A stretch of 63,018 bases of DNA, filler included, from Octopus bimaculoides (Eukaryota), in the NCBI RefSeq assembly GCF_001194135.2. It is 6 parts of 5 records of this genome, joined end to end, with 100 filler letters (N's around TTAATTAATTAA, not from the genome) between each part and the next. Parts side by side here need not be neighbours in the genome. Positions count along the whole stretch, not along the records: positions 40,864 to 56,326 come from NC_068982.1; 5 more parts are not named here. One strand, written 5' to 3'. The notes under the pieces were generated by a model. That model saw nothing but the letters and a program-made list of their open reading frames with translations, did not search any database and was not told the origin of the DNA. Position 1 is the first letter of the stretch, and every line of letters begins with the position of its first letter. Shown here piece by piece: positions 40,357-56,326 of this stretch. A program made the position numbers and the translations under genes.

Positions 40357-40884
40357 GAACACAGAAAGAAGCAAGGAGAGAAACAAGGAGAGAAAAATAT
40401 ATATATGTGTAGTGGTCAGCGATCTATCATGGCGAATGCCGGACAGAAGGATCACACAGGAGAGTTAAGAAGAAGGGGAGATAACAAAAAAGTAGTGATC
40501 CCAAAACGAAGGTGCGTGTGTGTGGGAGAATGCTGGTGATCTTAGCGTATGCATGTGTGTATGTAGGTGTGAAGGTGCGAAAATGTGGGGATGGGAATTG
40601 GTCAGTGCTGGTGTGTGCGTGGTGGTGTGTTGTGAAGTGATGTGTTGTGTGATGTGAAGGTGTTGGGAGGTGGGGAGGCGAAACTGGGTAAAGCATGGGT
40701 GGGGTGTGGGTTAAGCTGAGGGTGGGTAGAGGTAGGGGCATGTGGGTAGACAGAGGTTGGGATNNNNNNNNNNNNNNNNNNNNNNNNNNNNNNNNNNNNN
40801 NNNNNNNTTAATTAATTAANNNNNNNNNNNNNNNNNNNNNNNNNNNNNNNNNNNNNNNNNNNNAATCATGAATGGATGTTGTTT

Positions 40885-41222
40885 TCACAGCGATAATGCA
40901 CTTCTCAGTACATGAGTCGTTCCAGTTAGTACGATTTTTTGCACTTCCTGTAGGGATGGTAAGGCTGGTATCATTTTCAAATAGGTTTCAGTACCTTTTT
41001 TTAAACATTCCTAGAGATCCTACAACCACTGGTATGGTAGTCGCCTTGAGGTGCCACATGTTTTCAATTTCTATTAGCAAGTCTTTATATTTACCGATCT
41101 TGTCAGATTCTTTCGCCGCTATATTATGATCAGAGGGAATACTCATGTCAACTAATAAACACGTCTTCTTTGTCTGATCTTTTATTATAATATCCGGTTT
41201 ATTGGCTTTTATAGTCTTGTCG

Positions 41223-41226
<4 letters not shown>
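40885..41226 (-). pseudogene. Dong/R4-type LINE restriction-like endonuclease domain and C-terminus
   Basis: TDKTIKANKPDIIIKD..KTCLLVDMSIPSDHNIAAKESDKIGKYKDLLIEIENMWHLKATTIPVVVGSLG, then (frameshift) LQEVQKIVLTGTTHVLRSALSL*; 5' side abuts (TAA)n at 41225-41283. Confidence 0.9.
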
Positions 41227-41284
<58 letters not shown>

Positions 41285-42674
41285 AACCACATTACCATCA
41301 TTATAATTATCATTATTGTTATTAATATCATTACTATTAGTAATAGTACTAAATGCCATTTAATAGTTAAATAGAAAATACAGAATATCTGCCAGAGTTA
41401 AACTCGTGAATTCCGTCATATTTCTGTCTTTCATTCATTGATGTTGCTCAGCCATCTACTTAATCAATATATACGTATGCAGAACGATAATGTTTTTATG
41501 TGAGCAGCTAAAAGCAACATCTATACATTCCTCAAATTCCACGCTACTGATATAAATAAATAGGGGGGGAGACGTTAATGCCATCCTTCTATGTAGATGT
41601 AAAGCGCGGAATAGCCCAACATCTAAGAAATTTTCTATTCGGGCTGGTCGAGTGATAACAAGCAGAAACAATGTTACAGATAATGAAAGAAATTTCAGAA
41701 ATGATCTAATTATAAATCTCACAGAGGGACGTAAGTAGCAGTGTTACGATAACGCAGTTGTATACTGTCAACTTAATGCAACAATTCCTATTAGGGAATC
41801 ATACTGCTGGTATTTAACCCTAGGAAGCTGGACTGCCTCCTGTCGGCCTTGCCACATTTTCTGTGTCCTTATATTTGTGAGGGGGAGACGAGCATCCCCA
41901 CCCAGCCTAACCTGCATCCAGGGACATGTTTTGGAGTCATTGCTCGTCATCAACCTGAAGCAGTACGACCAGCTGGCTGAAGATGCCTGTCAACCTCTCA
42001 CCCCCATACCGAAATAAGATGGAGAAAGGATAAATTCAAAGGCTGTAAATCTTCTTCGAAGTCTGAAAGTCTAATGTACCTCAAGAGTTTAAATGAATCC
42101 CTAAGTCGTAGAGAGACCTGTCTGCCATGCATGGTCTGTCCATGTGGCTCAGAATCAAAAGTATTCTGTTTTCCAATGCAAAAGAAATCTATTGGGTTAG
42201 GTTTAGTTAGGTTAGCTCAACTCGATGACACATTAAATCTAATAGATGTAACGGTATGGGTTTACACTTTTAGCTTTCTGGGTTGTGACCGTACAAATTA
42301 TACACTTATTTGATATTAATTCGAATGAAGAAATCCATATTCAGTATTTCCACTTGAAGGTAGCTTAAAAGATTGATCTCATCACATGGCACACAGGTCA
42401 CATGGTGCCTATATCTTTGTGAACTAAGAAGACTGATTTAGTAGTAGGTCAATCAAAAATTGCTGTCCTATTTCCGCTTGTTTTGGCATATAACGTGCAT
42501 AGTGCACAAATAGCCACCTGCATTCCATATATACTGAAGCACAGCTAAAAGTATAAATATGAATATACATATATACATAGACATATATACGCACATATAT
42601 ATGCATCATACATATCTACGTGATGTATGTGTCCGTGTGTACACACACACACACACAAACACACACACGCACAC

Positions 42675-42708
<34 letters not shown>

Positions 42709-42717
42709 CTGTGTCAT

Positions 42718-42756
<39 letters not shown>

Positions 42757-43099
42757 GTCTATCTATCTATCTATCTACCTATCTATCTGTCTATCTATCT
42801 ATCTATCTATCTGTCTATCTATCTGAGGCGTGCATGTATAAATGCGTCCGTGTGGCTATTTGTGCGTTTGCATGTATGGCAAACAAATATTTGTATTCCT
42901 TTGTGACTAAAGAAAAAAAATGTAGTCTTAAAGATTGCGTGTCATCTGAAGGGTATTTTTAGTTTATTGCTGTCACGTATCCTTTTCATTCCATTTTCTT
43001 TCACGTCTCAGATGCAATGCCACAAGTTTTCGTCCTTTTAAAGTGCAGTTCACACAACGGTACAATAGAATATCACAACTCTCTACGTTAAAAGTGTTG

Positions 43100-43716
43100 C
43101 TTCTTGTTCTTGTTCTTGTTCTTGTTCTTGTTCTTCTTGTTCTTGTTCTTGTTCTTCTTCTTCTTCTTGTTCTTCTTCTTCTTCTTCTTCTTCTTCTTCT
43201 TCTTCTTCTTCTTCTTCTTCTTCTTCTTCTTCTTCTTCGTCTTCTTCTTCTTCTTCTTCTTCTTCTTCTTCTTCTTCTTCTTCTACTTCTTCTTTTTCTT
43301 CTTCTTCTTCTTCTTCATCTTCTGCCTCCCCCTTCTTCTTCTTCTTCCTCCTTCCTCCTTCTTCTTTTCCACCATCACTCCACNNNNNNNNNNNNNNNNN
43401 NNNNNNNNNNNNNNNNNNNNNNNNNNNNNNNNNNNNNNNNNNNNNNNNNNNNNNNNNNNNNNNNNNNNNNNNNNNNNNNNNNNNNNNNNNNNNNNNNNNN
43501 NNNNNNNNNNNNNNNNNNNNNNNNNNNNNNNNNNNNNNNNNNNNNNNNNNNNNNNNNNNNNNNNNNNNNNNNNNNNNNNNNNNNNNNNNNNNNNNNNNNN
43601 NNNNNNNNNNNNNNNNNNNNNNNNNNTTCTTCTTCTTCTTCTTCTTCTTCTTCTTCTTCTTCTTCTTCTTCTTCTTCTTCTTCTTCTTCTTCTTCTTCTT
43701 CTTCTTCTTCTTCTTC
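43100..43716. repeat. (TTC)n/(TTG)n trinucleotide expansion spanning a gap
   Basis: Directly visible; N gap 43384-43626. Confidence 0.95.
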
Positions 43717-43726
43717 CTTTTCTCAC

Positions 43727-44080
43727 AACCTCGCAAGTGGGAATTTCCTTCAGTACGAGTAGCCCATCCCGCTCAAAATGTCACTGAATAAAGGTCGTTT
43801 AAGGATGTTGAGCAAAACACCCACGTTTCCACAGGTGAATTACTAAAATCCCAAAGGATTCTTCTCAGGATAGGGCTACGGTGCTACCCAACCACTTCTG
43901 CTCGTGATCAGAGATGTACCTATCATCAGCCACTAAGGGACATGCTGAACTGGTTAAGGTGAATCAACTGACGTGCAAATCTGTGGTATTGAGCAAAATA
44001 TTTGACGTTGCCTATCGTTTATACCAAAACAAAACAATGTTGATGATAACACTTTCAATTAGATAAGACGAGAAGCCATG
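43727..44080. repeat. Unclassified dispersed repeat E, copy 2
   Basis: Aligns with 3250-3611. Confidence 0.75.
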
Positions 44081-44187
44081 GGAGACACTTCCTGGCATTG
44101 CATCAGGGTATTTATTAGTGTTGTTGTTGCTTTGAGGCGTAGTTATTGTTATTCTTTATTATTATTGTTGTTGCTTTGAGACCATAG

Positions 44188-44310
44188 TTAGCACGCGTGG
44201 CAAAATGCTTAGCCGTATTCCACCGTCTTTACGTTGTGAGTTCGAATTCCACTGGGGTCGACACGGCCCCATATCCTATCGGAGTTTATGAAATCAGTAC
44301 CAGTTGCACA
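44188..44310 (+). mobile_element. SINE family A, partial
   Basis: GTTAGCACGCGTGGCAAAATGCTTAGCCGTATT..GTGAGTTCGAATTCC. Confidence 0.65.
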
Positions 44311-44654
44311 AGAGTATATCAACAATTTTCCTGTTTAGTTTGATATTCTGACGCCTAATTTAGTAAGCGTCTTGACGCCAATGTTTCGCTGCGAAAGGAT
44401 GTTTAATGAGATCGAAATATATCCTTATATTTCGAAATAGCAAAAATATTACTAGCAAAGTTGTATTTTATTACTCGTATTCCAACGTTCATTACATTAA
44501 ATATACCAATAGTAAACGTACATCATGGGCTTGAATAATTTGATTTCTCATACGTGCAGTAAGTATTGAACTGCCTAAGGATATTCCTTATCGAGATCAA
44601 TATATCAGTCTTTACGTTCAAGGATAGAGAATGTTAAAATGGTGTGGGAGGAAG

Positions 44655-44787
44655 GTTTAGGGAAATTACCCGGTACTTTGTATGTATCTATCTTTCATTA
44701 CAAGTGTTTTCTTCCCAGTCACCATCCACACGGGGGCTGTACATTCTTGGACACATTCATTCAATTGAACTGCTAGTCTTTCATGCA
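44655..44787 (-). pseudogene. Short Dong/R4-type LINE fragment (start of RT)
   Basis: LHERLAVQLNECVQECTAPVWMVTGKKTLVMKDR, homologous to CHARIAAQLNTLL..PEWLTMGRTVLCLKK at 5926-6040. Confidence 0.65.
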
Positions 44788-45975
44788 AATCGTGGCTATA
44801 TTCGAGATTGTGATATAAGTAAACAAAAAGCTTATGCTATACCATACTGTCTATATCTGCTGTGACGATAAAGGCCAGTGAAACATCGGCAATTGTTTTA
44901 TGTAGTGCTTCGATAAAGAATATTATGAAGTTTTAGAGCCTAAATATTTTCCACGTTCTTCTTATTGTTATTTGAGTAAATTCTGTTGAAAATTGTTGTC
45001 ACCTGTCTTACTTTCAATATAGTTTCTTTGTTACATTCAATGAATCTATCTTAGCTAGTTGTTTGATTTCTTTTGTGACGTTTTACAACGTATAGAGGCG
45101 CAGAGTAAGTAAAAAAGAAATGAAGGTATGGTTAACTTAATAACAGTGAGATAAGTGCGTATACGAGGCTTGTGGTGAAGAAATGAATAAAAGAGAGCTA
45201 TATACGCACCATGAAAAAAAAGAATACTATATCTTTTAAAATTACTATTCAGCCCATCTTTCTGTATAAGTATCGAGAAATTTAATATAATCTGAACTAT
45301 AGTTATTGTATGTATGCTATATTTCCTTATATTATCCATGGCGGCCAAATGTATATTTCAAATATTACCTATCACACGACATGCTATAATATTTTTTTCT
45401 GGTTTCATACAGTCATTATATTAAAGTTGACATATGTTCATGCACTAACGCATGATATTTAGCAAAATTGTTTTTTATAGTTTTTAATATGAAGTTAGTA
45501 TCATTGCAATATTATTGTGACAGTCTACATTTAAACGCATAAATTATATTTTTCTCTATCTACCTCCTTATCTAAGAACATTAAAAACTGAAAACCCCTG
45601 CTTGATGACATAATGATGTTAGCCATTCCCTCAAGATTCAGGAATTACACATATTGTATTCAATATTACACATATTGTCAGAATCAGTAGAGTGCCGGAC
45701 AAAAGGATTGAAAGATATTAGTTATAGTGTTTTAAATTCTACCTGCAGCTCACACAGAAGTCGATTGCGTTTTTCATCCTTTTGCAGTCAAAAAATAAAT
45801 GAAATGAGCCAAGCACATGTATCAATTTACTTACATGTATACACCCATTTAATGTGAGTAGTTGGCTATGATAGCATCAATGATACATTGATCTGCATAT
45901 ATGTCATTCCACGAGCAAAATTGCGTTACGACCTTTTCTATTGTATATGATCTCTCATAAACGCAATTTCTGTGA

Positions 45976-46126
45976 TAACATGAACAGTAGTACCGTGTTT
46001 ACAGGGTGCATCATTCTCTACTCTGGTTTCAGAGGCAAATGCACCGTTTACACGGGTCCAGAGCTGAAAGCTGAAGAAAACAATACAACACATAACATTA
46101 GATGTATGAAACTCTCTTACTTTCTG
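45976..46126 (+). repeat. 151-bp segment duplicated at 47075-47225
   Basis: TAACATGAACAGTAG...CTCTTACTTTCTG, one mismatch (GAGG vs GAAG). Confidence 0.95.
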
Positions 46127-47037
46127 TCTAACTTCACAAGTGCTACAGCTGTTTGAAATACGAAGCGTTTTCCCTTGTACCCTGTACTATATGAAAATAC
46201 TCTTCTTAATGTGTTTCAGAATTAGAGAAGTAATTTTAGTTCACCTGCGTAAACATCATAAATAAAGAAATTGGAGTCTTTGTTACATTTGTCGCAATGT
46301 TTTCTAGTCTGCTGAATGACACAGTAAACAGACAGAATTAAGTGTATGCTGCCGAAGAATGGAGAACACCACAACGTGAAGATGTGAAATATCTACACTT
46401 AATTTAGGTTTTGCTCCAGGTCCTGCGCTTGAACGGATGGAGCCAGTAATGCAAATTGAGACTAAGTAAAGCAGAGGATTACATTTAAGAATGGGAAAAC
46501 GTTGTTAAGCAGATTTGCTTTGTAAATATTCGAGAACCATGAATAGAATGGCAATACGAACTTTTCCGCAACAGCCGAATATAATAAACATTTGTAGAAA
46601 TATGAGGATAAGAGGGATGTGTATTAGTCTATTAAATTAAACATTTTTGATAACAACAGCAGCAATAATGATAATACTAACAACAACAATAAGAATGATA
46701 ATAATAATACTAATTATAATAATAACAACAACAATAATAATAGTAATAAACAATGGAAAACATTATTATGAACTAAGTATTGCCCTACCGACAGCGTATT
46801 TAAAAAATAGCCTGTTTTAAAAATGTTTAAACTGAAAGAAAATAGATTTGTAAATACAGTTGTAATTCCAAGCGTTTGATTCATATAATATATATATAGA
46901 CACTCAAAGAGAGAAAAAGAATATACAGTAAATTTAAATGATAAGCTTTAAAATTATTATTAAACCTTGGGAGAGGCATTATGCCGGTAATAAACACACG
47001 CACTGGTTCAGTCCTTTATTAATTTATATAGTTTTTT

Positions 47038-47078
47038 GTTAAATTATTTCATTGCACTCTTGCAATCTCTTCAGTAAC
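47038..47078 (-). ncRNA. Minimal hammerhead-like motif (canonical CUGAAGA core), left-arm copy
   Basis: Exact reverse complement of 47241-47281. Confidence 0.62.
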
Positions 47079-47240
47079 ATGAACAGTAGTACCGTGTTTA
47101 CAGGGTGCATCATTCTCTACTCTGGTTTCAGAAGCAAATGCACCGTTTACACGGGTCCAGAGCTGAAAGCTGAAGAAAACAATACAACACATAACATTAG
47201 ATGTATGAAACTCTCTTACTTTCTGGAAGTGGAGAGACAA

Positions 47241-47281
47241 GTTACTGAAGAGATTGCAAGAGTGCAATGAAATAATTTAAC
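47241..47281 (+). ncRNA. Minimal hammerhead-like motif (canonical CUGAAGA core)
   Basis: GTTA-CTGAAGA-G-ATTGCA agag TGCAAT-GAAA-TA-ATT-TAAC: 4-bp helix I, 6-bp helix II, AUU triplet, AATAAA ~17 nt downstream. Confidence 0.65.
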
Positions 47282-47472
47282 AAAAAACTATATAAATTAA
47301 TAAAGGACTGAACCAGTGCGTGTGTTTATTACCGGCATAATGCCTCTCCCAAGGTTTAATTGTATTTCTTTCAACACACGTATCCACATCAAGAATCTTG
47401 CACACGAAATACACATACGAAATTTAAAATTATTGTTTCATGCATTATTTACATTATTTACATTTGACGGTA

Positions 47473-47516
47473 ACACAAAGTTTCGGCTGATATACCCTCC
47501 AGCCTTCATGAGGTGT
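47473..47516 (-). ncRNA. Hammerhead-like motif in element Q (core CUCAUGA, probably decayed CUGAUGA)
   Basis: ACAC-CTCATGA-A-GGCTG gagggtatat CAGCC-GAAA-C-TTT-GTGT: 4-bp helix I, 5-bp helix II; G5->C and a non-pairing helix III in this copy. Confidence 0.65.
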
Positions 47517-47589
47517 CTTGGGGAAATTTCAAACCTGGGTTCTCATTCCTAAGGTATTTTTCGATGTTGCTATTATTATTATTATTATT

Positions 47590-47657
47590 CAGGTCACTGC
47601 TTGGAATCGAACTCAGAATTTTGGGGTTAGTAGACCGCGCTCTTAACCACTACCCCA
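47590..47657 (-). promoter_or_regulatory. tRNA-like internal Pol III promoter (A and B boxes)
   Basis: A-box-like TGGGGTAGTGG (47657-47647), anticodon-like CTACTAA loop, B box GAGTTCGATTCC (47614-47603). Confidence 0.6.
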
Positions 47658-48093
47658 AGATGAGCGCAATTATTCGTCAAATGTAAATAATGTTAATAAT
47701 GTGCATAATTCCTCATCTCTTAAATATCGAATTTGTTTCATATTCTATATTATTAGAACCGAGCTTACAATATTGCTAGGAGTAAAACTGTTGGAGTAAA
47801 TGGAAATCTAGAAAGTTACCTCTCCAGTAACAAAAGTGGACAAATGAAAGATATCTTTCGTTTGGCTCAACTGAAGGATACTGTGACTTATGTAAAAGTC
47901 ACCGAGCAAAGATCAAATCCCCAAAAATGGGCACAACAAAAATGTGCATATGTCGTTTGTGAAGGGTGTGTTGTATGAAATAATGCTAGGTGTTAATATA
48001 CATGCATATATATATAATGTGTGTTCGAGTGTGTGTGTGTAAAACATACATACACACGCACAAACACACACACACACACACACACACATATAA

Positions 48094-48139
<46 letters not shown>

Positions 48140-49396
48140 CTATTATTACAGTCAACTATGTAATTGCTGTATTGTTGTGTTTGTCTAAGGTACATATTAT
48201 GCTTGAACATTCTGGAAATATTGTTTCTAACGTTATTGTCTAACAAAACAGGAAACTGGAAATTGTTTTTGTAATATTCATGAACCATTACACATGTTTC
48301 ATATTCTAATATGAATTACAAAATTTTACATGTTAGATAAACATGTAATATATTTCCTATTAAAAATTCTTCGGACATTATTATTGGATTCTCTGCCTGA
48401 ATACTTACATAGAGGAAATTTTTTACAAGTTTATCTAACAGTTAAAACTTCATAATTCCCATTAGCAAATGAAACATACGTAATGGTGAATAAATAATAA
48501 CAAAAACGTTTTTTTCTGTTTTTTGCATATATGCATACATACATAATACATACATACATACATATACATACAAATACATACATATATATATATATATATA
48601 TANNNNNNNNNNNNNNNNNNNNNNNNNNNNNNNNNNNNNNNNNNNNNNNNNNNNNNNNNNNNNNNNNNNNNNNNNNNNNNNNNNNNNNNNNNNNNNNNNN
48701 NNNNNNNNNNNNNNNNNNNNNNNNNNNNNNNNNNNNNNNNNNNNNNNNNNNNNNNNNNNNNNNNNNNNNNNNNNNNNNNNNNNNNNNNNNNNNNNNNNNN
48801 NNNNNNNNNNNNNNNNNNNNNNNNNNNNNNNNNNNNNNNNNNNNNNNNNNNNNNNNNNNNNNNNNNNNNNNNNNNNNNNNNNNNNNNNNNNNNNNNNNNN
48901 NNNNNNNNNNNNNNNNNNNNNNNNNNNNNNNNNNNNNNNNNNNNNNNNNNNNNNNNNNNNNNNNNNNNNNNNNNNNNNNNNNNNNNNNNNNNNNNNNNNN
49001 NNNNNNNNNNNNNNNNNNNNNNNNNNNNNNNNNNNNNNNNNNNNNNNNNNNNNNNNNNNNNNNNNNNNNNNNNNNNNNNNNNNNNNNNNNNNNNNNNNNN
49101 NNNNNNNNNNNNNNNNNNNNNNNNNNNNNNNNNNNNNNNNNNNNNNNNNNNNNNNNNNNNNNNNNNNNNNNNNNNNNNNNNNNNNNNNNNNNNNNNNNNN
49201 NNNNNNNNNNNNNNNNNNNNNNNNNNNNNNNNNNNNNNNNNNNNNNNNNNNNNNNNNNNNNNNNNNNNNNNNNNNNNNNNNNNNNNNNNNNNNNNNNNNN
49301 NNNNNNNNNNNNNNNNNNNNNNNNNNNNNNNNNNNNNNNNNNNNNNNNNNNNNNNNNNNNNNNNNNNNNNNNNNNNNNNNNNNNNNNNNNNNNNNN

Positions 49397-49645
49397 CAAA
49401 TCGCTGATAGATTAGAGAATGTGTCTGAATTGCCGAGTCCATATTTTTTCGTGAAATTATTATTATTTGTAGTATTTTCTTCGTCATCAGCAAATGGATG
49501 GTAGAGGCATTTTTATCTTATTGTAGTCTGTTAACATTTTTTTTTCAAGGTATTTTTGTGGTCATGTTTGTTCTCCCAGTTTTTAGAATTGAATTCTGTC
49601 GGGAAAAGATTCTATCAACTATTAAGAATGAAGATAATATCAAGG
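49397..49645 (+). repeat. 249-bp exact duplicate of 50229-50477 (both abut N gaps)
   Basis: Identical by eye; the first copy starts at a gap edge and the second ends at a gap edge. Confidence 0.9.
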
Positions 49646-50967
49646 AATTTCTTCAGGAATGTAGGAGAATGGAAATAAAAATAAAGAGCAAAAAATAAAT
49701 TTAACGAAAATGATAACATAAAGCGAAAATAGAAAAGTAAAGGAAAATCCTTATTTGTAAAAAGCTTGTGATGTGATAGGTATTTGTGTGTGTNNNNNNN
49801 NNNTACATTTATATGTACATACTGAAAAATTAGCGAATGCCACGCACATTGTATCCATAAATAGATACAACTGTAAATTTATGGTTCTCTCTCAGACTTC
49901 ATGTTTTAAATACAACTGAGAGCATTAATGAAACGTATAATTAAAGTCTTCTAATTTCGATGGTGACGCTCTAAGAGACCGAATCCGGAAACGCATAGCT
50001 CGAAATCGAAATTCTGAAAATCCCAACCGTTCTTTATTTCAAGTGATAGCAACAGTCTTGCCTCTTTAAAGCATTTAGTAATGGACCGACTCACACAAAC
50101 CTACATTAGTACTTTTGCATAAGTTGGACGTTTGTTGGAAATAAAATAAAATAATGAAACAAATAATAGCTGAGTTAAATCTTGCAACGGTGTGCATTAT
50201 AACCAATAGGATTTTAGATAAATAGGATCAAATCGCTGATAGATTAGAGAATGTGTCTGAATTGCCGAGTCCATATTTTTTCGTGAAATTATTATTATTT
50301 GTAGTATTTTCTTCGTCATCAGCAAATGGATGGTAGAGGCATTTTTATCTTATTGTAGTCTGTTAACATTTTTTTTTCAAGGTATTTTTGTGGTCATGTT
50401 TGTTCTCCCAGTTTTTAGAATTGAATTCTGTCGGGAAAAGATTCTATCAACTATTAAGAATGAAGATAATATCAAGGNNNNNNNNNNNNNNNNNNNNNNN
50501 NNNNNNNNNNNNNNNNNNNNNNNNNNNNNNNNNNNNNNNNNNNNNNNNNNNNNNNNNNNNNNNNNNNNNNNNNNNNNNNNNNNNNNNNNNNNNNNNNNNN
50601 NNNNNNNNNNNNNNNNNNNNNNNNNNNNNNNNNNNNNNNNNNNNNNNNNNNNNNNNNNNNNNNNNNNNNNNNNNNNNNNNNNNNNNNNNNNNNNNNNNNN
50701 NNNNNNNNNNNNNNNNNNNNNNNNNNNNNNNNNNNNNNNNNNNNNNNNNNNNNNNNNNNNNNNNNNNNNNNNNNNNNNNNNNNNNNNNNNNNNNNNNNNN
50801 NNNNNNNNNNNNNNNNNNNNNNNNNNNNNNNNNNNNNNNNNNNNNNNNNNNNNNNNNNNNNNNNNNNNNNNNNNNNNNNNNNNNNNNNGAATATGTGTGT
50901 ATATATACACGCAAACAAACTCGTACACACACTCGCACACAAACACACGCACACATATGTATATGTA

Positions 50968-51000
<33 letters not shown>

Positions 51001-51656
51001 CCATATATATATATATATATACAGATCTGTCTTTCTTACTGTCTGTCTGTCTGTCTGTATGTCTGTCTGTCTGTCTCTCTCTCTCTCTATATATATATAT
51101 ATGGAATGTATTATTATTCCTTTATCTTTCTTCAGAATCATTCATTGCTTTCTTACTGTATAGTTCGATTCCTTCAAGGTAGACAAATCAACGATACGAG
51201 ATGAAGAAAATAAGTACAAAAGAAAATTATACTAACACACTGTAAATTATCAATAATATATTGGAGTTTATAATGCCGAAACTAGACGAAACTACTTCTG
51301 TTTATATTTTTTTACATTTATTAACTCTTTTTTTATGTTATTTGTTTATACTTAACGTTCGCCTAATATTTTCCTTTCCTTTTTTTGAAAGTGACACATA
51401 GTTCCCGTGAAAGACTCTGGCAGATAGCAGGAAGGAAATGTTCAGACAAAGATTATAACTCAGAGCTCCGAATCTCATTGACTAATCAATCACAAAAACA
51501 AACAGACCTTCATACAGATACATATACAAGCGCATAAACACCGCCAGAGTAGGTAGACACACATCGAAGTATACATAAACAAACACCTATAAAATCGTGT
51601 CTATACATACAGGATATATGTGTATATATATACGCATAGATCTACGTACTAATATA

Positions 51657-51705
<49 letters not shown>

Positions 51706-52040
51706 TCTCTTATATAATATATAATATATATATATATTCATACGTATATATGTATATCCACGTATGCGTATGTGTGAGTGTGTGTGCGTATATATGTGTA
51801 TAAAACAACTTGCTGTATGTCAGTATTTTCTTGAGCTAAAGAATAAAGTGCGAAATTATTTTTTCCGAGTAAGAATACTTTTAAGATGGCTTCCAAATAT
51901 CACTGACAGCTTCTTGCATATGAATACATAATAGAATACATGGTATAAATTTATGTGCATATTTTATGTAAATACTGTACAAAGTCTATATCAACTGACG
52001 CACAGACTCACTCTGAGGCATATGTGTTCATGATCATACA

Positions 52041-52073
<33 letters not shown>

Positions 52074-52730
52074 GCATGCTTACATACCTACATACATATG
52101 TAAACCTGTATGTATGTATGTATGTATGTATGTATCTATCTATCTATCTATCTATCTACTATACTCACATGCGTGTATATACGTCTGTGTGCGTGTAAAC
52201 CTAAAGCCAGATATTTGTGTATGTAAATTTAAAGGTAGTTCTTAGCTCTGTAACACTGCAGTTACGGCCCGACTCTTCGCAGGACGAAATCTCTAGATAT
52301 ACCAGAGTTTGTAAATCTCATTCAGGGAAGGAATTTTAGAAAGAAAAATATGTCTGAAGACTTAAACAGCAAAGAAGAGGCAGCACCAGAGAGAAACTAG
52401 TCATTACCGCCAAGAGATGCAGAGTTGGTAATTTCAACGTAAATGAATGTAAGTGTTCGATTATTTACGCAACAGAAGCAAACAAAAGTATGTTAGCGCA
52501 AATGAAATTTAAACAAGATTTTTGACGGAATAAGGTATGATGGGGTTTTATCAGCAGTAGTATTAGTGTACAATTATAGAAGCAGAAGGAATAGGAAAGC
52601 TGTTGATGGAAGGGAAATAGATGTAGGGATGGGACAATAAACAAAGGGAAGCATTTGAAGGGAGGGTGCACAAAATAAATAGAAAAGATTTCGGAAGTTT
52701 AGTGTTCACAATGAAAGATAGAATATAACA

Positions 52731-52957
52731 TTCTTTTATTTGTTTCAGTCATTTGACTGCGGTCATACTGGAGCACCGGCTTTAGTCGAACAAATCGAGC
52801 CCAGGACTTATTCTTTGTAAGCCCAGTACTTATTCTATCGGTCTCTCTTTTGCGGAACTGGTAAGGTATGGGGACGTAAACCCACCAGCATCGGTTGTCT
52901 AGTGCTGGTCGGGTGACAGACACAGAAACACACACACACACACACACTCTCTCTGTC

Positions 52958-52998
<41 letters not shown>

Positions 52999-53196
52999 GA
53001 CACACACGCACTTACACACATATATATATATATAAGACAGGCTTCGTTCAGTTTCCGTCTACCATATCTACTTACAAGGCTGTAGTCAACCCGAGGCAAT
53101 AGTAGAAGACACTTGCTGAAGGTGTCACGCAATGGGACTGAACCCGGAACCATGTGATTAGTAAGCAAGCTACTTACCATACAGCCACTCCTACTC
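52731..53196 (-). mobile_element. SINE family B, full length, expanded internal microsatellite
   Basis: Collinear with 9378-9768; (CA)(CT)(CA)(TA) tract 52920-53035. Confidence 0.88.
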
Positions 53197-53269
53197 CCAT
53201 ATAGACATTTTCTGTCACAACCTTCAGATTTACTGGTATTCACGTGTTCATCAGGTATGCAGTAGGTAT

Positions 53270-53445
53270 CTCCTTGGTTTTGCATAGCGATGGAAAATCC
53301 CTCTAGGCTGGATGTAATGTATGTTTCAGAGATCCAGGAGAGCATACACTTTCTGCTAATTTTGTTGTCATCCTCCTGCATACGGATTATGTACCCCTGT
53401 ATTGTTATTTGCTGGTATGACGAGTACTTTTCCTTCCAGCAAGCG
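53270..53445 (-). pseudogene. RLE-type LINE post-RT fragment (degenerate)
   Basis: WKEK..GYIIRMQEDDNKISRKCMLSWISETYITSSLEGFSIAMQNQ resembles the W...EG...AxQxQ block preceding the CCHC knuckle. Confidence 0.45.
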
Positions 53446-53875
53446 ATTCAATCCAATACATCGCAAAACAAGTAAAACTACTTGCATATCCTGTAGCTGC
53501 TTGCCCAAAGGGTCACACCTAAATATTAACACCTTCTTAGAAAGTTCTATGCACGTGAATAAATTCTAAAATGATTTAATCCTAAATTTGATCAATATAA
53601 ATTTCTGAAAAACACCCACCTTAAAACATAGGTACCACTCCAGTAAAACCGACACACCAAAAGAAGAATTAACTCAACAGAGACTACATAAAGCCAATAT
53701 CAATTTCAATGAATCGCAGTCCGAATCTGACTTCACTGGCCAAATCTTCCAAGACAGTGTCAATAATATTTTTGATTAAAAATAGCAAATGTGCACACCA
53801 CTAAAGTATAGATTAATGTAAAATTGTCTTTATCAAAATTGAACAAAATACAAAAACAAACACACACATTTACAG

Positions 53876-53928
<53 letters not shown>

Positions 53929-56259
53929 AATATACATAAATATATGCATATATACACGCGTATACATACATATGTATGTGCGTGTTTTTGTATATACGTA
54001 TGTATATATCAATGTATGTGTATTTCCCGTGTCTAGCAGACGCATATTGCTGTCTTGTTCTGATTCTGAATTATAAACCATCCACATCTGACCACCTCTG
54101 CTGCAGCCTAAACAACGCCGGCAGTCTTTCTTTATGCATAAACTCATAAATTATCCATGATATTGGCACCATATCACTTCAATCATTTTATTTTTTTATT
54201 GCAATTACACTGAAAACAAAAAGAAAAAATATTTACAGAAATGAATAACATTTTGTGCCACAGCATTTATTGCATTCATTAGTTAAGACCCTGGACAAAA
54301 TATCATCTTCTAAAAGATGGTTATTTACATCGGTCAGCTGAAAGACAATAATAAATCAAATATTAGAATTTATTGTAGAAAACATGATAAAAAATCTTTG
54401 CTATATCAGTTTTAATGATGGCACTCATAGACAAGACCAAATCTTACCATAATCAGGTTTAACAGGGCACAAAATGAGATATTAGAGTAGAAAAATTAAT
54501 AAATTGACGACGTATTACGGAAAATTCTTGAAAATGTTGATAATCTACAGAGAAGATGCCAAAATTCATCCGTGATAAGGTAATCTGCCTGATTTTCAGC
54601 TAGCACAGCAGACCAAATAATTCCGATTGTAGAAAACATAACCTGTGATGAAAGAAATAAGAACAACTTCAATGTTAAATATTTTCACGGAAATGAAATA
54701 AGGTGATTATGCTAGTATCCATTAATACAAGGCTTAACTTCTTGAATTCTAATATTCTGTATGGCTTTATGGAGATAAAATAATAGATTGTGCGACGAAT
54801 GTTTCGTTAGGAAACATTTCATATTTTCTATAAATAATAATACCAATGAAATGAATAAAGCCTGAAATACTATATATTTGAGAGATGTTCAAGCCAGACC
54901 CCAACAGCCTCTTCCTCAATGGTTTCAGGTTAGGATTAGTGTGAATATTATAGGCGCGGCACTTTTCTCAAGATTAAACAACAAAGAACATGTATTCCAC
55001 ATATACCCAAGGGATTATCACTTGATAGAGAATGACCAGCACGACGTTCTTGACAACAAAGAGATTATTCACTGAAAGTCCATTACACATAGCTACAATT
55101 AAAATATACACAGCATTGTAATTTCCGCTTGCAGAAGTAGGAACAGCTCTAAACCTGCAAATAAGAATAGTTTGGATTAGTACGTCTGGTAAACAAGTCA
55201 GAATAATTTGTCTTCCCACTCATTTTCCGTATAACCAGAAATGCATTACAGAAGACATGTTCACTTATGTAGATGTTACCTTAGTTTTACTATTATCTCT
55301 TCAGCCTATATTTGTTGTATTTTCCTGTAGTAGTATTAACAGGAAATTAAAGTATATTATAATAGAACTATTTCTGAGAAGCAATACTCACTCTCCAAGA
55401 GACATTAACTAGTTATTGAAAGTGAAGCTTAATATTTTACATATTAACCCTTATCTAATGTATGCATCTTCCCTACGCCCATCAATACTTACGTTAACTA
55501 ATATAAGATTCTTGGCATCTTATATTAGATATATACATCATTGATTTGATACAATGGTTTAAGAAAGTCTCCTCAAATAAATGATTTTACCATATGCCTG
55601 GAATTCAATTATCGATTGTGAAAGCCCTAATATATCGAATCCAATTCATTACGGTTGTAGCAAATCTATAAATCCACTTTTATTCTTGTAAAACCGTGAA
55701 TATTTCCCAAAATGCAATTTCCCAACTGTCAACAGAACTCTGAACATCAGATCCAAGATTGATGTCGACTTATCTCTAAACATGTTTATGTCATTATGTT
55801 CGTTGAAAGAGAAGGTTAATAGATTTTGTTACAGCAACTACGACCAAACGCAAGACATACTTTAATCACATTTTAAGTGAATTTACGTTGACTTGTAGCC
55901 AAAATATTGCGCTAAGTAATCGGCAGTGAATAACACGAGAGAAACGTTATATCAACCAAATTAATACTTTAACACATTATCCTATTACTTCTTACCAATT
56001 ACTGTCAAAGCTTGTGGCCAAATTCCAATATTCGAACTGACCTCAATACGTATAAACGCAAAACATGAAAAAAAAAATATGAGTAAAACAATTGAGAGAA
56101 TTTATGCACTTCTATGGTTATAACTGTCTATGTGTTTTAAGCTTATTATTCTCCAAGAATTTGTAGTGTTGATAGGTTATGTGGCTGGTATACATACATA
56201 CATAGTACATATATACATATATGCATACATACATGCATACATACATACATATCTATATA

Positions 56260-56326
<67 letters not shown>

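What the first reader, a model, noticed from the sequence alone, without database searches (positions are those of the whole stretch)
45976..47360. Perfect 120-bp inverted repeat whose spacer is a captured 151-bp copy of DNA ~1.1 kb upstream
Seen: 46959-47078 and 47241-47360 are exact reverse complements. The spacer consists of 47075-47225, a 1-mismatch copy of unique-looking 45976-46126, plus 15 nt. The junction shares a 4-nt microhomology (TAAC) between the arm end and the captured segment. Inference: a recent insertion made by serial template switching (element, then neighbouring host DNA, then fold-back on the element), i.e. a snapshot of PLE-type integration that duplicates local genomic sequence.
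Basis: partly seen in the sequence, partly recalled or inferred. Interest (0 to 1): 0.7.

Follow-up and report, generated by a model that had tools for sequence, protein, structure and literature searches.

The report
Head-to-head Penelope-like element insertion
A young 464-bp insertion made of two mirror-image end fragments of a Penelope-like retroelement, each with a small hammerhead-ribozyme motif, that trapped a copy of DNA from 1.1 kb upstream: a known kind of insertion, but an unusually clean record of how it forms.

Summary
46959-47078 and 47241-47360 are perfect reverse complements. 47075-47225 copies 45976-46126 with one mismatch, they share TAAC, and a 15-nt filler follows.

- A 12-bp direct repeat, TTTAAAATTATT (46947-46958 and 47423-47434), brackets a 464-bp unit. 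About 4 in 10,000 positions give this by chance. The right arm therefore carries a 62-nt one-sided extension.
- Each arm starts, at its inner end, with a hammerhead-ribozyme-like core of the minimal type published for Penelope-like element (PLE) terminal repeats. It gave 0 full hits in 30 Mb of simulated sequence. Rfam models do not detect it.
- The target is AT-rich and the top-strand junction follows ATT.

Inverted terminal fragments, a tail at one end, a short target-site duplication (TSD) and host DNA between the repeats are the published PLE insertion signature. They also fit the 2024 in vitro result that a PLE enzyme primes from both nicked strands at two internal RNA sites.

The PLE reading is supported. 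The fold-back step and the proposed boundary (47730) are not.

No reverse transcriptase gene, other family copy, read or empty site could be found, and the assembly has a proven local error 2 kb away. This is a new member of a known kind, of moderate interest.

The parts
45976..46126 (+). Source segment P: the apparently single-copy local DNA that was copied into the insertion. It contains an internal hairpin.
   Evidence: 151 nt, one mismatch to 47075-47225. No other copy in the piece. Hairpin in the fold. It lies outside the duplication-bounded unit, so it is taken as the donor.
46947..46958 (+). Left copy of the 12-bp target-site duplication TTTAAAATTATT. Its 3' end (..ATT) is the inferred top-strand nick and primer.
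   Evidence: Exact 12-mer abutting the left arm and recurring at 47423-47434. Only 4 of 9,979 positions in the piece show a recurrence of 12 nt or more.
46959..47078 (-). Left arm: 120-nt fragment of the element's terminal repeat, element sense on the minus strand. The outer end is inferred reverse-transcription start site 1. It has no tail.
   Evidence: Exact reverse complement of 47241-47360.
47038..47078 (-). Minimal hammerhead-like motif of the left arm (mirror of 47241-47281).
   Evidence: Pattern scan hit on the minus strand.
47075..47078 (+). TAAC microhomology at the arm-to-copy junction. It is also the complement of helix I (GUUA) of the hammerhead motif.
   Evidence: Shared by arm end and 45976-45979. 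8 of 13 further upstream bases match, p about 0.03.
47079..47225 (+). P': copy of 45980-46126, same orientation, one G-to-A difference at 47133.
   Evidence: (D17).
47226..47240 (+). 15-nt filler GAAGTGGAGAGACAA with no detectable template.
   Evidence: No 9-mer match and no significant local alignment in the piece.
47241..47360 (+). Right arm: the same 120-nt terminal-repeat fragment, element sense on the plus strand.
47241..47281 (+). Minimal hammerhead-like motif. Helix I GUUA (47241-44) pairs with UAAC (47278-81). Core CUGAAGA (47245-51). Unpaired G (47252). Helix II AUUGCA/UGCAAU (47253-58 / 47263-68) with loop AGAG. GAAA (47269-72). Minimal helix III. Predicted cleavage between 47277 and 47278.
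   Evidence: The only two hits in the piece are the two arms. 30 Mb of Markov simulation gave 3 core hits and 0 full hits. The architecture matches the published PLE minimal hammerhead. Rfam is negative.
47361..47422 (+). 62-nt A+C-rich extension present only on the right arm. Interpreted as the PLE 'tail', the stretch between two reverse-transcription start sites.
   Evidence: It lies between the arm and the right duplication copy. A+C is 64.5%, in the top 5% of windows. No template elsewhere in the contig. Tail concept.
47340..47422 (+). ATG followed by an open frame that runs through the arm end and tail (MPLPRFNCISFNTRIHIKNLAHEIHIR..). Possibly the start of the element's reading frame. Weak evidence.
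   Evidence: Translation. By analogy to PLEs whose terminal repeat plus tail holds the first 12-22 codons. No database relative.
47423..47434 (+). Right copy of the 12-bp target-site duplication TTTAAAATTATT.

Best explanation
The feature is a young, heavily 5'-truncated, head-to-head insertion of a Penelope-like retroelement (PLE), or of a non-autonomous element moved by PLE enzymes. It occupies 46959-47422.

Inferred sequence of events:
1. The element's endonuclease nicked both strands of an AT-rich target (..GC|TTTAAAATTATT|GT..) 12 bp apart.
2. Both 3' ends primed reverse transcription of element RNA. The top-strand end started at an internal RNA site (now 46959, equivalent to 47360). The bottom-strand end started 62 nt further downstream (now 47422). 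That leaves a 'tail' on one side only.
3. Both cDNAs ran through the hammerhead motif and stopped at the same RNA position, 4 nt upstream of the ribozyme core. [quoted passage not shown]
4. The top-strand cDNA, ending ..CAGTAAC, re-annealed by TAAC to the chromosome 1.1 kb behind it and copied 147 nt (45980-46126).
5. It then acquired 15 nt of unknown origin and was joined to the other cDNA.
6. Gap filling gave the 12-bp target-site duplication.

Shown directly by the sequence: the repeat geometry, the duplication, the ribozyme-like motif, the microhomology and the one-sided extension.

Inferred: the enzyme, the RNA template, the order of the steps, and that the assembly is right.
For: 1. The repeat geometry is exact.
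2. The 12-bp direct repeat abuts the left arm and lies 62 nt beyond the right arm. The empirical chance is about 4 in 10,000. Both copies are intact and the arms are identical, so the event is recent.
3. Each arm holds CUGAAGA, an unpaired G, a 6-bp helix II, GAAA, a minimal helix III and a 4-bp helix I.
   - Simulated sequence gives about 1e-7 core hits per nt and no full hits in 30 Mb.
   - A long helix II, a 4-5 bp helix I, an unpaired nucleotide after A9 and a minimal helix III are the published PLE minimal-hammerhead features.
   - The same paper reports pairs of such motifs 100-700 bp apart on opposite strands (PMC4209133).
4. Published PLE insertions have inverted terminal repeats, a tail at one end, 8-10 bp duplications and AT-rich targets. 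Unrelated non-coding sequences caught between solo repeats are also reported (PMC8557442; PMC3846280).
5. In vitro, a PLE protein nicks and extends both strands and prefers ATT. It starts reverse transcription at two internal RNA sites not homologous to the target, and the tail is the stretch between them. It mostly uses uncleaved RNA (PMC11167929). Here:
   - the top-strand junction follows ..ATTATT with no primer/template homology;
   - the arms read through the predicted ribozyme cleavage site;
   - start site 1 lies 108 nt from the start of helix II, against 111-118 nt in the anole element.
6. The tail is A+C-rich.
Against: - No reverse transcriptase or GIY-YIG coding sequence lies in or near the unit, and none could be tied to the arm.
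- No second copy of the arm was found in the piece or in any searchable collection, so family status is unproven.
- Rfam hammerhead models give no hit even at E of 10 or less on 105 nt.
- The motif has A-U where the conserved G10.1-C11.1 pair should be. Its helix III is not a clean palindrome.
- I wrote the scan pattern after seeing the sequence.
- The extension is 62 nt, against the usual 30-40.
- The assembly is a gapped scaffold with a proven local error 2 kb away (a 249-bp exact duplicate abutting two N gaps). PLE repeats are known to mis-assemble.
- With arms of 120 nt, short reads cannot fix the orientation of the spacer.
Confidence: 0.6

Rival explanations
1. Same element, but one cDNA made the whole structure by self-priming. 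A single cDNA copied the element and jumped to the neighbouring DNA. It then folded back on itself and copied its own first 120 nt.
For: Self-priming has been proposed for PLE inverted repeats (PMC3846280). It explains without further assumption why both arms end at the same inner nucleotide.
Against: A fold-back copy of the first cDNA should run on through the 62-nt tail into the primer. Instead the left arm stops exactly where the tail would begin and is joined there to the duplication. Two start sites with priming from both strands are demonstrated in vitro.
Confidence: 0.12
2. Assembly artefact, whole or partial. The insertion of an element fragment may be real, but the inverted duplicate, the spacer or both were created by the assembler or gap closer, or by merging two haplotypes. 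The single mismatch would then be a heterozygous site.
For: The piece is a scaffold with four N gaps. A 249-bp exact duplicate (49397-49645 and 50229-50477) abuts two of them, which is a local assembly error. PLE tandem and inverted structures are known to trouble short-read assemblies. One mismatch in 151 nt is compatible with heterozygosity.
Against: - The region lies inside a 4,976-bp gap-free contig.
- The junctions share only 0-4 nt, too little for a graph mis-join, so they must exist in reads.
- An artefact would not produce a duplication, a one-sided tail and co-terminal arms that fit a known biochemical mechanism.
Confidence: 0.15
3. The 151-nt segment is not captured host DNA. It is the element's own sequence upstream of the ribozyme, so the left cDNA was simply longer. 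On this reading 45976-46126 is a separate fragment of the same young family.
For: In element sense the upstream copy ends at ..GTTA, the same nucleotide at which the right arm begins. 8 of 13 bases beyond also match.
Against: - That fragment would have lost the element's 3' end, which is unusual for a retroelement copy.
- Its flank shows no significant similarity to the arm.
- 99.3% identity between two independent fragments 1.1 kb apart would be a coincidence.
Confidence: 0.08
4. DNA-level repair or replication error without any mobile element. Examples are microhomology-mediated template switching (FoSTeS/MMBIR) or polymerase-theta end joining, giving an inverted duplication with a templated insertion from nearby DNA.
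For: There is a backward jump of 1.1 kb at 4-nt microhomology, an untemplated filler and an inverted duplication. All are typical of such events (established knowledge, not tested here).
Against: It does not explain the hammerhead-like motif at the inner end of both arms. It also does not explain the 12-bp duplication with a 62-nt unique sequence inside it, or why the arm has no parental copy outside the unit.
Confidence: 0.04
5. A foldback-type or miniature DNA transposon with 120-bp terminal inverted repeats.
For: The terminal inverted repeats are perfect. A TA dinucleotide could be read at both outer ends.
Against: - The TA sits inside the palindromic arm ends and so carries no information.
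- No direct repeat flanks the arms themselves: the longest prefix recurrence is 4 nt.
- The significant duplication includes a 62-nt non-inverted extension.
- The interior is a copy of local DNA.
Confidence: 0.02

Closest known systems
Endonuclease-positive Penelope-like element insertions with inverted pseudo-LTRs and a one-sided tail (Arkhipova et al. 2013, PMC3846280; Craig et al. 2021, PMC8557442)
   Same: Inverted terminal-repeat fragments bound the insert. An extension sits at one end only. The duplication is short (8-10 bp published, 12 bp here). The target is AT-rich. Unrelated non-coding sequence sits between solo repeats. The copy is heavily 5'-truncated.
   Different: This copy has no coding region. 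The arms are only 120 nt. The extension is 62 nt rather than 30-40. The captured DNA comes from 1.1 kb away on the same strand, with a microhomology junction. That last detail does not appear in the passages of these papers that I read.
Minimal hammerhead ribozymes of PLE terminal repeats (Cervera and de la Pena 2014, PMC4209133)
   Same: CUGANGA and GAAA boxes. A long helix II (6 bp). A short helix I (4 bp). An unpaired nucleotide between A9 and helix II. A minimal helix III. Pairs of motifs on opposite strands 100-700 bp apart.
   Different: A-U replaces the highly conserved G10.1-C11.1 pair. The helix III region (AUAAU) is not a perfect palindrome. Activity is untested. Rfam covariance models do not score it.
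In vitro mechanism of the anole Poseidon element (Frangieh et al. 2024, PMC11167929)
   Same: Both target strands are used as primers. The nick follows ATT. Reverse transcription starts at two internal RNA sites with no homology to the target. The tail equals the stretch between the two sites. The template is not ribozyme-cleaved. The start site is about 110 nt downstream of helix II.
   Different: That is a biochemical system with a defined element. Here everything is read from one genomic scar. The spacing of the two sites is 62 nt. The jump to chromosomal DNA is not part of that study.
LINE-1 twin priming (5' inversion)
   Same: The second nicked strand primes on the element RNA and yields an inverted segment inside one target-site duplication.
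   Different: In twin priming the inverted and direct segments come from different parts of the RNA. Here both arms copy the same 120 nt and end at the same nucleotide, and the element carries a hammerhead motif rather than a poly(A) tail. This comparison rests on general knowledge and was not tested here.
Animal non-LTR retrozymes (hammerhead-bearing tandem repeats, bioRxiv 10.64898/2026.07.22.740005; PMC7229834)
   Same: A small non-coding unit of about 180 nt carries a type I hammerhead and derives from PLE terminal sequence.
   Different: Retrozymes are defined by head-to-tail tandem units with at least two complete ribozymes. Here the two motifs are head-to-head, not tandem.

Membership tests
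Penelope-like elements (endonuclease-positive) | Single reading frame with telomerase-like reverse transcriptase and GIY-YIG endonuclease | tested here: not met
   The unit and its surroundings hold no long reading frame, and Pfam gave no hit on the local frames. A 5'-truncated copy is not expected to carry the gene. A master copy could not be sought: no collection held the arm, and the possible N-terminal frame has no relative. Membership of the family therefore remains inferred from non-coding features.
Penelope-like elements (endonuclease-positive) | Hammerhead ribozyme motif in the terminal repeat | tested here: inconclusive
   At motif level the test is passed: both conserved boxes and helices I and II are present, in the published minimal architecture. 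The two arms are the only hits in the piece, and 30 Mb of simulation gave 0 full hits. Against this, the G10.1-C11.1 pair is replaced by A-U, the Rfam models are silent, and self-cleavage is untested.
Penelope-like elements (endonuclease-positive) | Inverted 5'-truncated copy next to the direct copy, forming inverted repeats at the ends of the insert | tested here: met
   The 120-nt arms are exact reverse complements.
Penelope-like elements (endonuclease-positive) | Optional extension (tail) at one end of the insert only | tested here: met
   62 nt (47361-47422) lie between the right arm and the duplication. Nothing comparable lies on the left. The published range is 30-40 nt.
Penelope-like elements (endonuclease-positive) | Short target-site duplication in an AT-rich target | tested here: met
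   TTTAAAATTATT occurs twice. The empirical chance is about 4e-4.
Penelope-like elements (endonuclease-positive) | Dispersed multi-copy family in the host genome | not testable with these tools
   The host genome is in none of the searchable DNA collections. The 15-kb piece has no other copy.
Non-LTR retrozymes | Head-to-tail tandem units, at least two with complete hammerheads | tested here: not met
   The two motifs are on opposite strands, head-to-head, and no tandem unit is present.
Foldback / miniature inverted-repeat DNA transposons | Target-site duplication immediately outside both terminal inverted repeats | tested here: not met
   The longest repeat of the sequence right of the right arm found left of the left arm is 4 nt. 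The significant duplication sits 62 nt beyond the right arm.

The most novel reading that the evidence does not exclude
The locus is a natural record that a PLE cDNA, on reaching the 5' end of its RNA template, can jump by a few bases of homology onto the chromosome it is attached to and copy it. PLE integration itself would then create local segmental duplications. The same record would confirm in vivo that both nicked strands prime at two distinct RNA sites, which so far has been shown directly only in vitro. If such locally templated spacers are common in head-to-head pairs of this family, this would be a previously uncounted route by which these elements capture and duplicate host sequence.
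Probability: 0.3. Interest if true: 0.55.

Novelty: new member of a known kind. Interest (0 to 1): 0.4.

Why it matters
PLE integration is the least understood retrotransposition pathway. The first biochemical model dates from 2024 and stops at cDNA initiation.

A young, undecayed insertion that preserves both priming junctions, both cDNA ends, the one-sided tail, the duplication and the joint between the two cDNAs shows what happens after initiation. It shows where the cDNAs stop. It shows that the template was not ribozyme-cleaved. It shows that the gap between the cDNAs can be bridged by copying nearby chromosomal DNA.

One locus proves little on its own, but it defines a search pattern: two minimal hammerheads head-to-head, a tail on one side, and a spacer that matches DNA within a few kb. 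Applied genome-wide, that pattern would test the model.

For annotation, such perfect hairpins should not be called microRNA precursors or foldback transposons.

Tried and rejected
**Independent copies of the junctions.**
- Exact look-ups of the two reading frames that span them found nothing on record.
- A homology search with the junction frame found no candidate.

**Arm, captured segment and ribozyme core as DNA patterns.** Viral, metagenome and bacterial/archaeal collections gave zero matches. The host genome is not in them.

**Species or repeat library through the LINE-like fragment at 40988-41359.**
- The only relatives are 56-69% identical proteins in ENA contigs.
- The one locus fetched (L001) shares no nucleotide similarity with the piece.

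**Rfam.** Scans of 15 kb, 1.9 kb and 105 nt gave only microsatellite-driven microRNA noise and a generic long-hairpin hit (MIR447). No hammerhead was reported.

**ARAGORN.** No tRNA.

**Coding signal.**
- Pfam on ten local frames gave nothing.
- The possible element N-terminus (ATG at 47340) was too short on its own. Extended to 70 aa it had no relative.

**Origin of the filler and tail.**
- No template exists anywhere in the contig.
- I compared the filler from memory with common sequencing adapters and found only a 7-mer in common with the Nextera end, which I judged to be chance.

**RNA folding of arm plus tail.** Not more stable than shuffles. An 11-bp GU/AC stem around start site 1 is only suggestive.

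**Rejected coincidence.** The 832-bp distance between segment P and the arm equals the 832-bp spacing of the gap-flanking duplicate. I rejected a link because the latter depends on an arbitrary 10-N gap.

Full report
**Observation**

The piece (40864-56326) is AT-rich (about 33% G+C), packed with microsatellites and interrupted by four N gaps. It is therefore eukaryotic DNA from a scaffolded assembly. The finding lies inside a gap-free contig of 4,976 bp (43627-48602).

- 46959-47078 and 47241-47360 are exact reverse complements. The match ends abruptly at all four ends.
- 47075-47225 equals 45976-46126 except for one base (46034 G, 47133 A).
- TAAC is shared at the junction.
- The remaining 15 nt, GAAGTGGAGAGACAA, match nothing else in the piece.
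- Neither the arm nor the 151-nt segment has another copy in the piece.

**New feature 1: a target-site duplication**

Comparing the outer flanks showed that the 12 nt immediately left of the left arm, TTTAAAATTATT (46947-46958), recur exactly at 47423-47434. That is 62 nt to the right of the right arm. I slid the same test along the whole piece. A recurrence of 12 nt or more occurred at 4 of 9,979 positions, this one included.

Nothing comparable flanks the arms directly; the best recurrence there is 4 nt. The inserted unit is therefore 46959-47422 (464 bp), composed as follows:

| Part | Length |
|---|---|
| Arm | 120 nt |
| Copy of upstream DNA beyond TAAC | 147 nt |
| Filler | 15 nt |
| Arm | 120 nt |
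| Extension, on one side only | 62 nt |

The extension has no template elsewhere in the contig. It is A+C-rich at 64.5%, in the top 5% of windows. The predicted empty site is ..GATAAGC-TTTAAAATTATT-GTTTCATGC...

**New feature 2: a hammerhead-like motif in each arm**

Read from its inner end, the arm begins GUUA CUGAAGA G AUUGCA AGAG UGCAAU GAAA UAAUU UAAC. These are the two conserved hammerhead boxes. They are separated by a perfect 6-bp hairpin (helix II) and flanked by a 4-bp helix I (GUUA/UAAC). Helix III is minimal, and the predicted cleavage site lies between 47277 and 47278.

- A scan for box, hairpin and box hit only the two arms in the piece.
- In 30 Mb of first-order Markov sequence of the same composition it found 3 core hits and no hit with helix I.
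- I wrote the pattern after seeing the sequence, so these numbers overstate the significance. The margin is nevertheless several orders of magnitude.

Rfam's hammerhead models report nothing, even on 105 nt at E of 10 or less. This is as expected. Cervera and de la Pena needed a special descriptor for the minimal hammerheads of Penelope-like elements (PLEs).

[quoted passage not shown] The present motif fits this point by point.

There are two deviations:
- A-U stands where the conserved G10.1-C11.1 pair should be.
- The helix III region is not cleanly palindromic.

**Comparison with published PLE insertions**

Several features are described as typical of PLE insertions (PMC8557442):
- heavy 5' truncation;
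- an inverted truncated copy that forms inverted repeats around the unit;
- a 30-40 bp tail at one end;
- a preference for simple AT-rich targets.

In the rotifer Adineta vaga, inserts bounded by inverted pseudo-LTRs have 8-10 bp duplications and a 31-bp tail on one repeat. Unrelated non-coding sequences caught between solo repeats are also reported there (PMC3846280).

The 2024 in vitro study of an anole element gives the mechanism (PMC11167929):
- The protein nicks and extends both DNA strands and prefers ATT.
- Reverse transcription starts at two internal RNA sites that are not homologous to the target.
- The tail is the stretch between those two sites.
- Uncleaved RNA is the main template.

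**How the locus maps onto that mechanism (inference)**

- The top-strand primer ends ..ATTATT at 46958. It shows no homology to the RNA at the first copied base. Its cDNA is the left arm, started at site 1.
- The bottom-strand primer ends at 47423. Its cDNA covers the tail and the right arm, started at site 2, 62 nt downstream.
- Site 1 lies 108 nt from the start of helix II, against 111-118 nt in the anole element.
- Both cDNAs read through the predicted cleavage site, so the RNA was not ribozyme-cleaved.
- Both stop at the same nucleotide, 4 nt upstream of the ribozyme core. [quoted passage not shown]
- At that end the top-strand cDNA (..CAGTAAC) re-paired through TAAC with the chromosome 1.1 kb behind it and copied 147 nt. 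A further 8 of 13 bases also match (p about 0.03).
- It then gained 15 nt of unknown origin and was joined to the other cDNA.

The perfect arms, the intact duplication and one difference in 151 nt all indicate a recent event.

**Fold-back versus double priming**

However, it predicts that the left arm would continue into the tail, and it does not. Double priming at two start sites explains the asymmetry and has experimental support. I therefore prefer it, without excluding self-priming, which has been proposed for PLEs.

**Other rivals**

- *DNA-level template switching.* This would account for the microhomology, filler and inversion. It would not account for the ribozyme motif, the duplication with a unique 62-nt stretch inside it, or the absence of a parental arm outside the unit.
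- *DNA transposon with 120-bp terminal repeats.* There is no duplication next to the arms.
- *The 151-nt segment as element sequence rather than host DNA.*
  - In its favour, in element sense the upstream copy ends at the same GTTA at which the right arm begins.
  - Against it, that fragment would have lost the element's 3' end.
  - Its flank is also not similar to the arm.

**Is it an artefact?**

The assembly is demonstrably imperfect here. A 249-bp exact duplicate (49397-49645 and 50229-50477) abuts two N gaps. This is the mark of two small contigs whose overlap was not merged. PLE repeats are also known to confuse short-read assemblers.

Against an artefact:
- The junctions share at most 4 nt, so they must be present in reads.
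- The whole unit has a coherent biological architecture.

With 120-nt perfect arms, short reads cannot fix the spacer orientation, but flipping it leaves the model unchanged. I put the chance of a substantial artefact at about 15%.

**What could not be tested**

- No collection available here holds this genome or any copy of the arm.
- The unit encodes nothing recognisable.
- Family membership therefore rests on non-coding hallmarks alone: five met or largely met, the coding hallmark absent from this truncated copy, and copy number untestable.

**Verdict**

This is a new member of a known kind. Its interest is moderate. It is a clean natural counterpart to the 2024 in vitro model, and it defines a genome-wide search that could show how PLE cDNAs are completed and how often they duplicate local host DNA.

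Noticed in passing
window 49397-49645 and 50229-50477: Two exactly identical 249-bp stretches. The first begins right after the N gap 48603-49396 and the second ends right before the N gap 50478-50888. It looks like two small contigs whose overlap was not merged or that were placed in the wrong order, i.e. a local scaffolding error.
   Followed up: partly
window 47441-47706: A separate element 8 bp right of the insertion. 27-31 nt inverted repeats (47443-47469 / 47675-47701, 96%) enclose, on the minus strand, a tRNA-like head with box A/B-like sequences (..GGGGTAGTGGTTAAGAGCGCGG..GAGTTCGATTCCAAG..). An (AAT)6 run and about 110 nt of body follow. It looks like a tRNA-derived SINE, but ARAGORN and Rfam do not call a tRNA.
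   Followed up: partly
window 40988-41222, minus strand: Reading-frame fragment ..KPDIIIKDQTKKTCLLVDMSIPSDHNIAAKE..KYKDLLIEIENMW..IPVVVGSLG. From memory it resembles the restriction-enzyme-like endonuclease tail of some invertebrate non-LTR retrotransposons. An (AAT)n run precedes it. It has no Pfam hit. Its only relatives are unnamed proteins, 56-69% identical, on long ENA contigs.
   Followed up: partly
window 42526-42830, 43055-43760, 48040-48600, 50890-51100, 51610-52160, 52910-53000, 53860-54020, 56180-56326: Exceptional density and variety of microsatellites: (CA)n, (TA)n, (TATC)n, (TGTC)n, (CT)n, (ATAC)n and long trinucleotide runs. They produce dozens of spurious microRNA hits in Rfam at relaxed thresholds.
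   Followed up: no
window 45993-46055: The captured source segment contains its own imperfect hairpin (CCGTGTTTACAGGGTGCAT .. ATGCACCGTTTACACGG). The single base that differs between source and copy lies in its loop. Whether the hairpin favoured the template switch is unknown.
   Followed up: no
window 47316-47326 and 47373-47383: An 11-bp GU/AC stem (GUGCGUGUGUU / AACACACGUAU) would enclose the inferred first reverse-transcription start site (47360/47361). It recalls the AC-rich stem-loop at the start sites of the anole element. The fold is not more stable than shuffled sequence.
   Followed up: partly
window 46640-46750: An (AAT)/(AAC)-type trinucleotide tract lies about 200 bp left of the insertion site. 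Published PLEs show a bias for AT-rich simple sequence and microsatellites.
   Followed up: no
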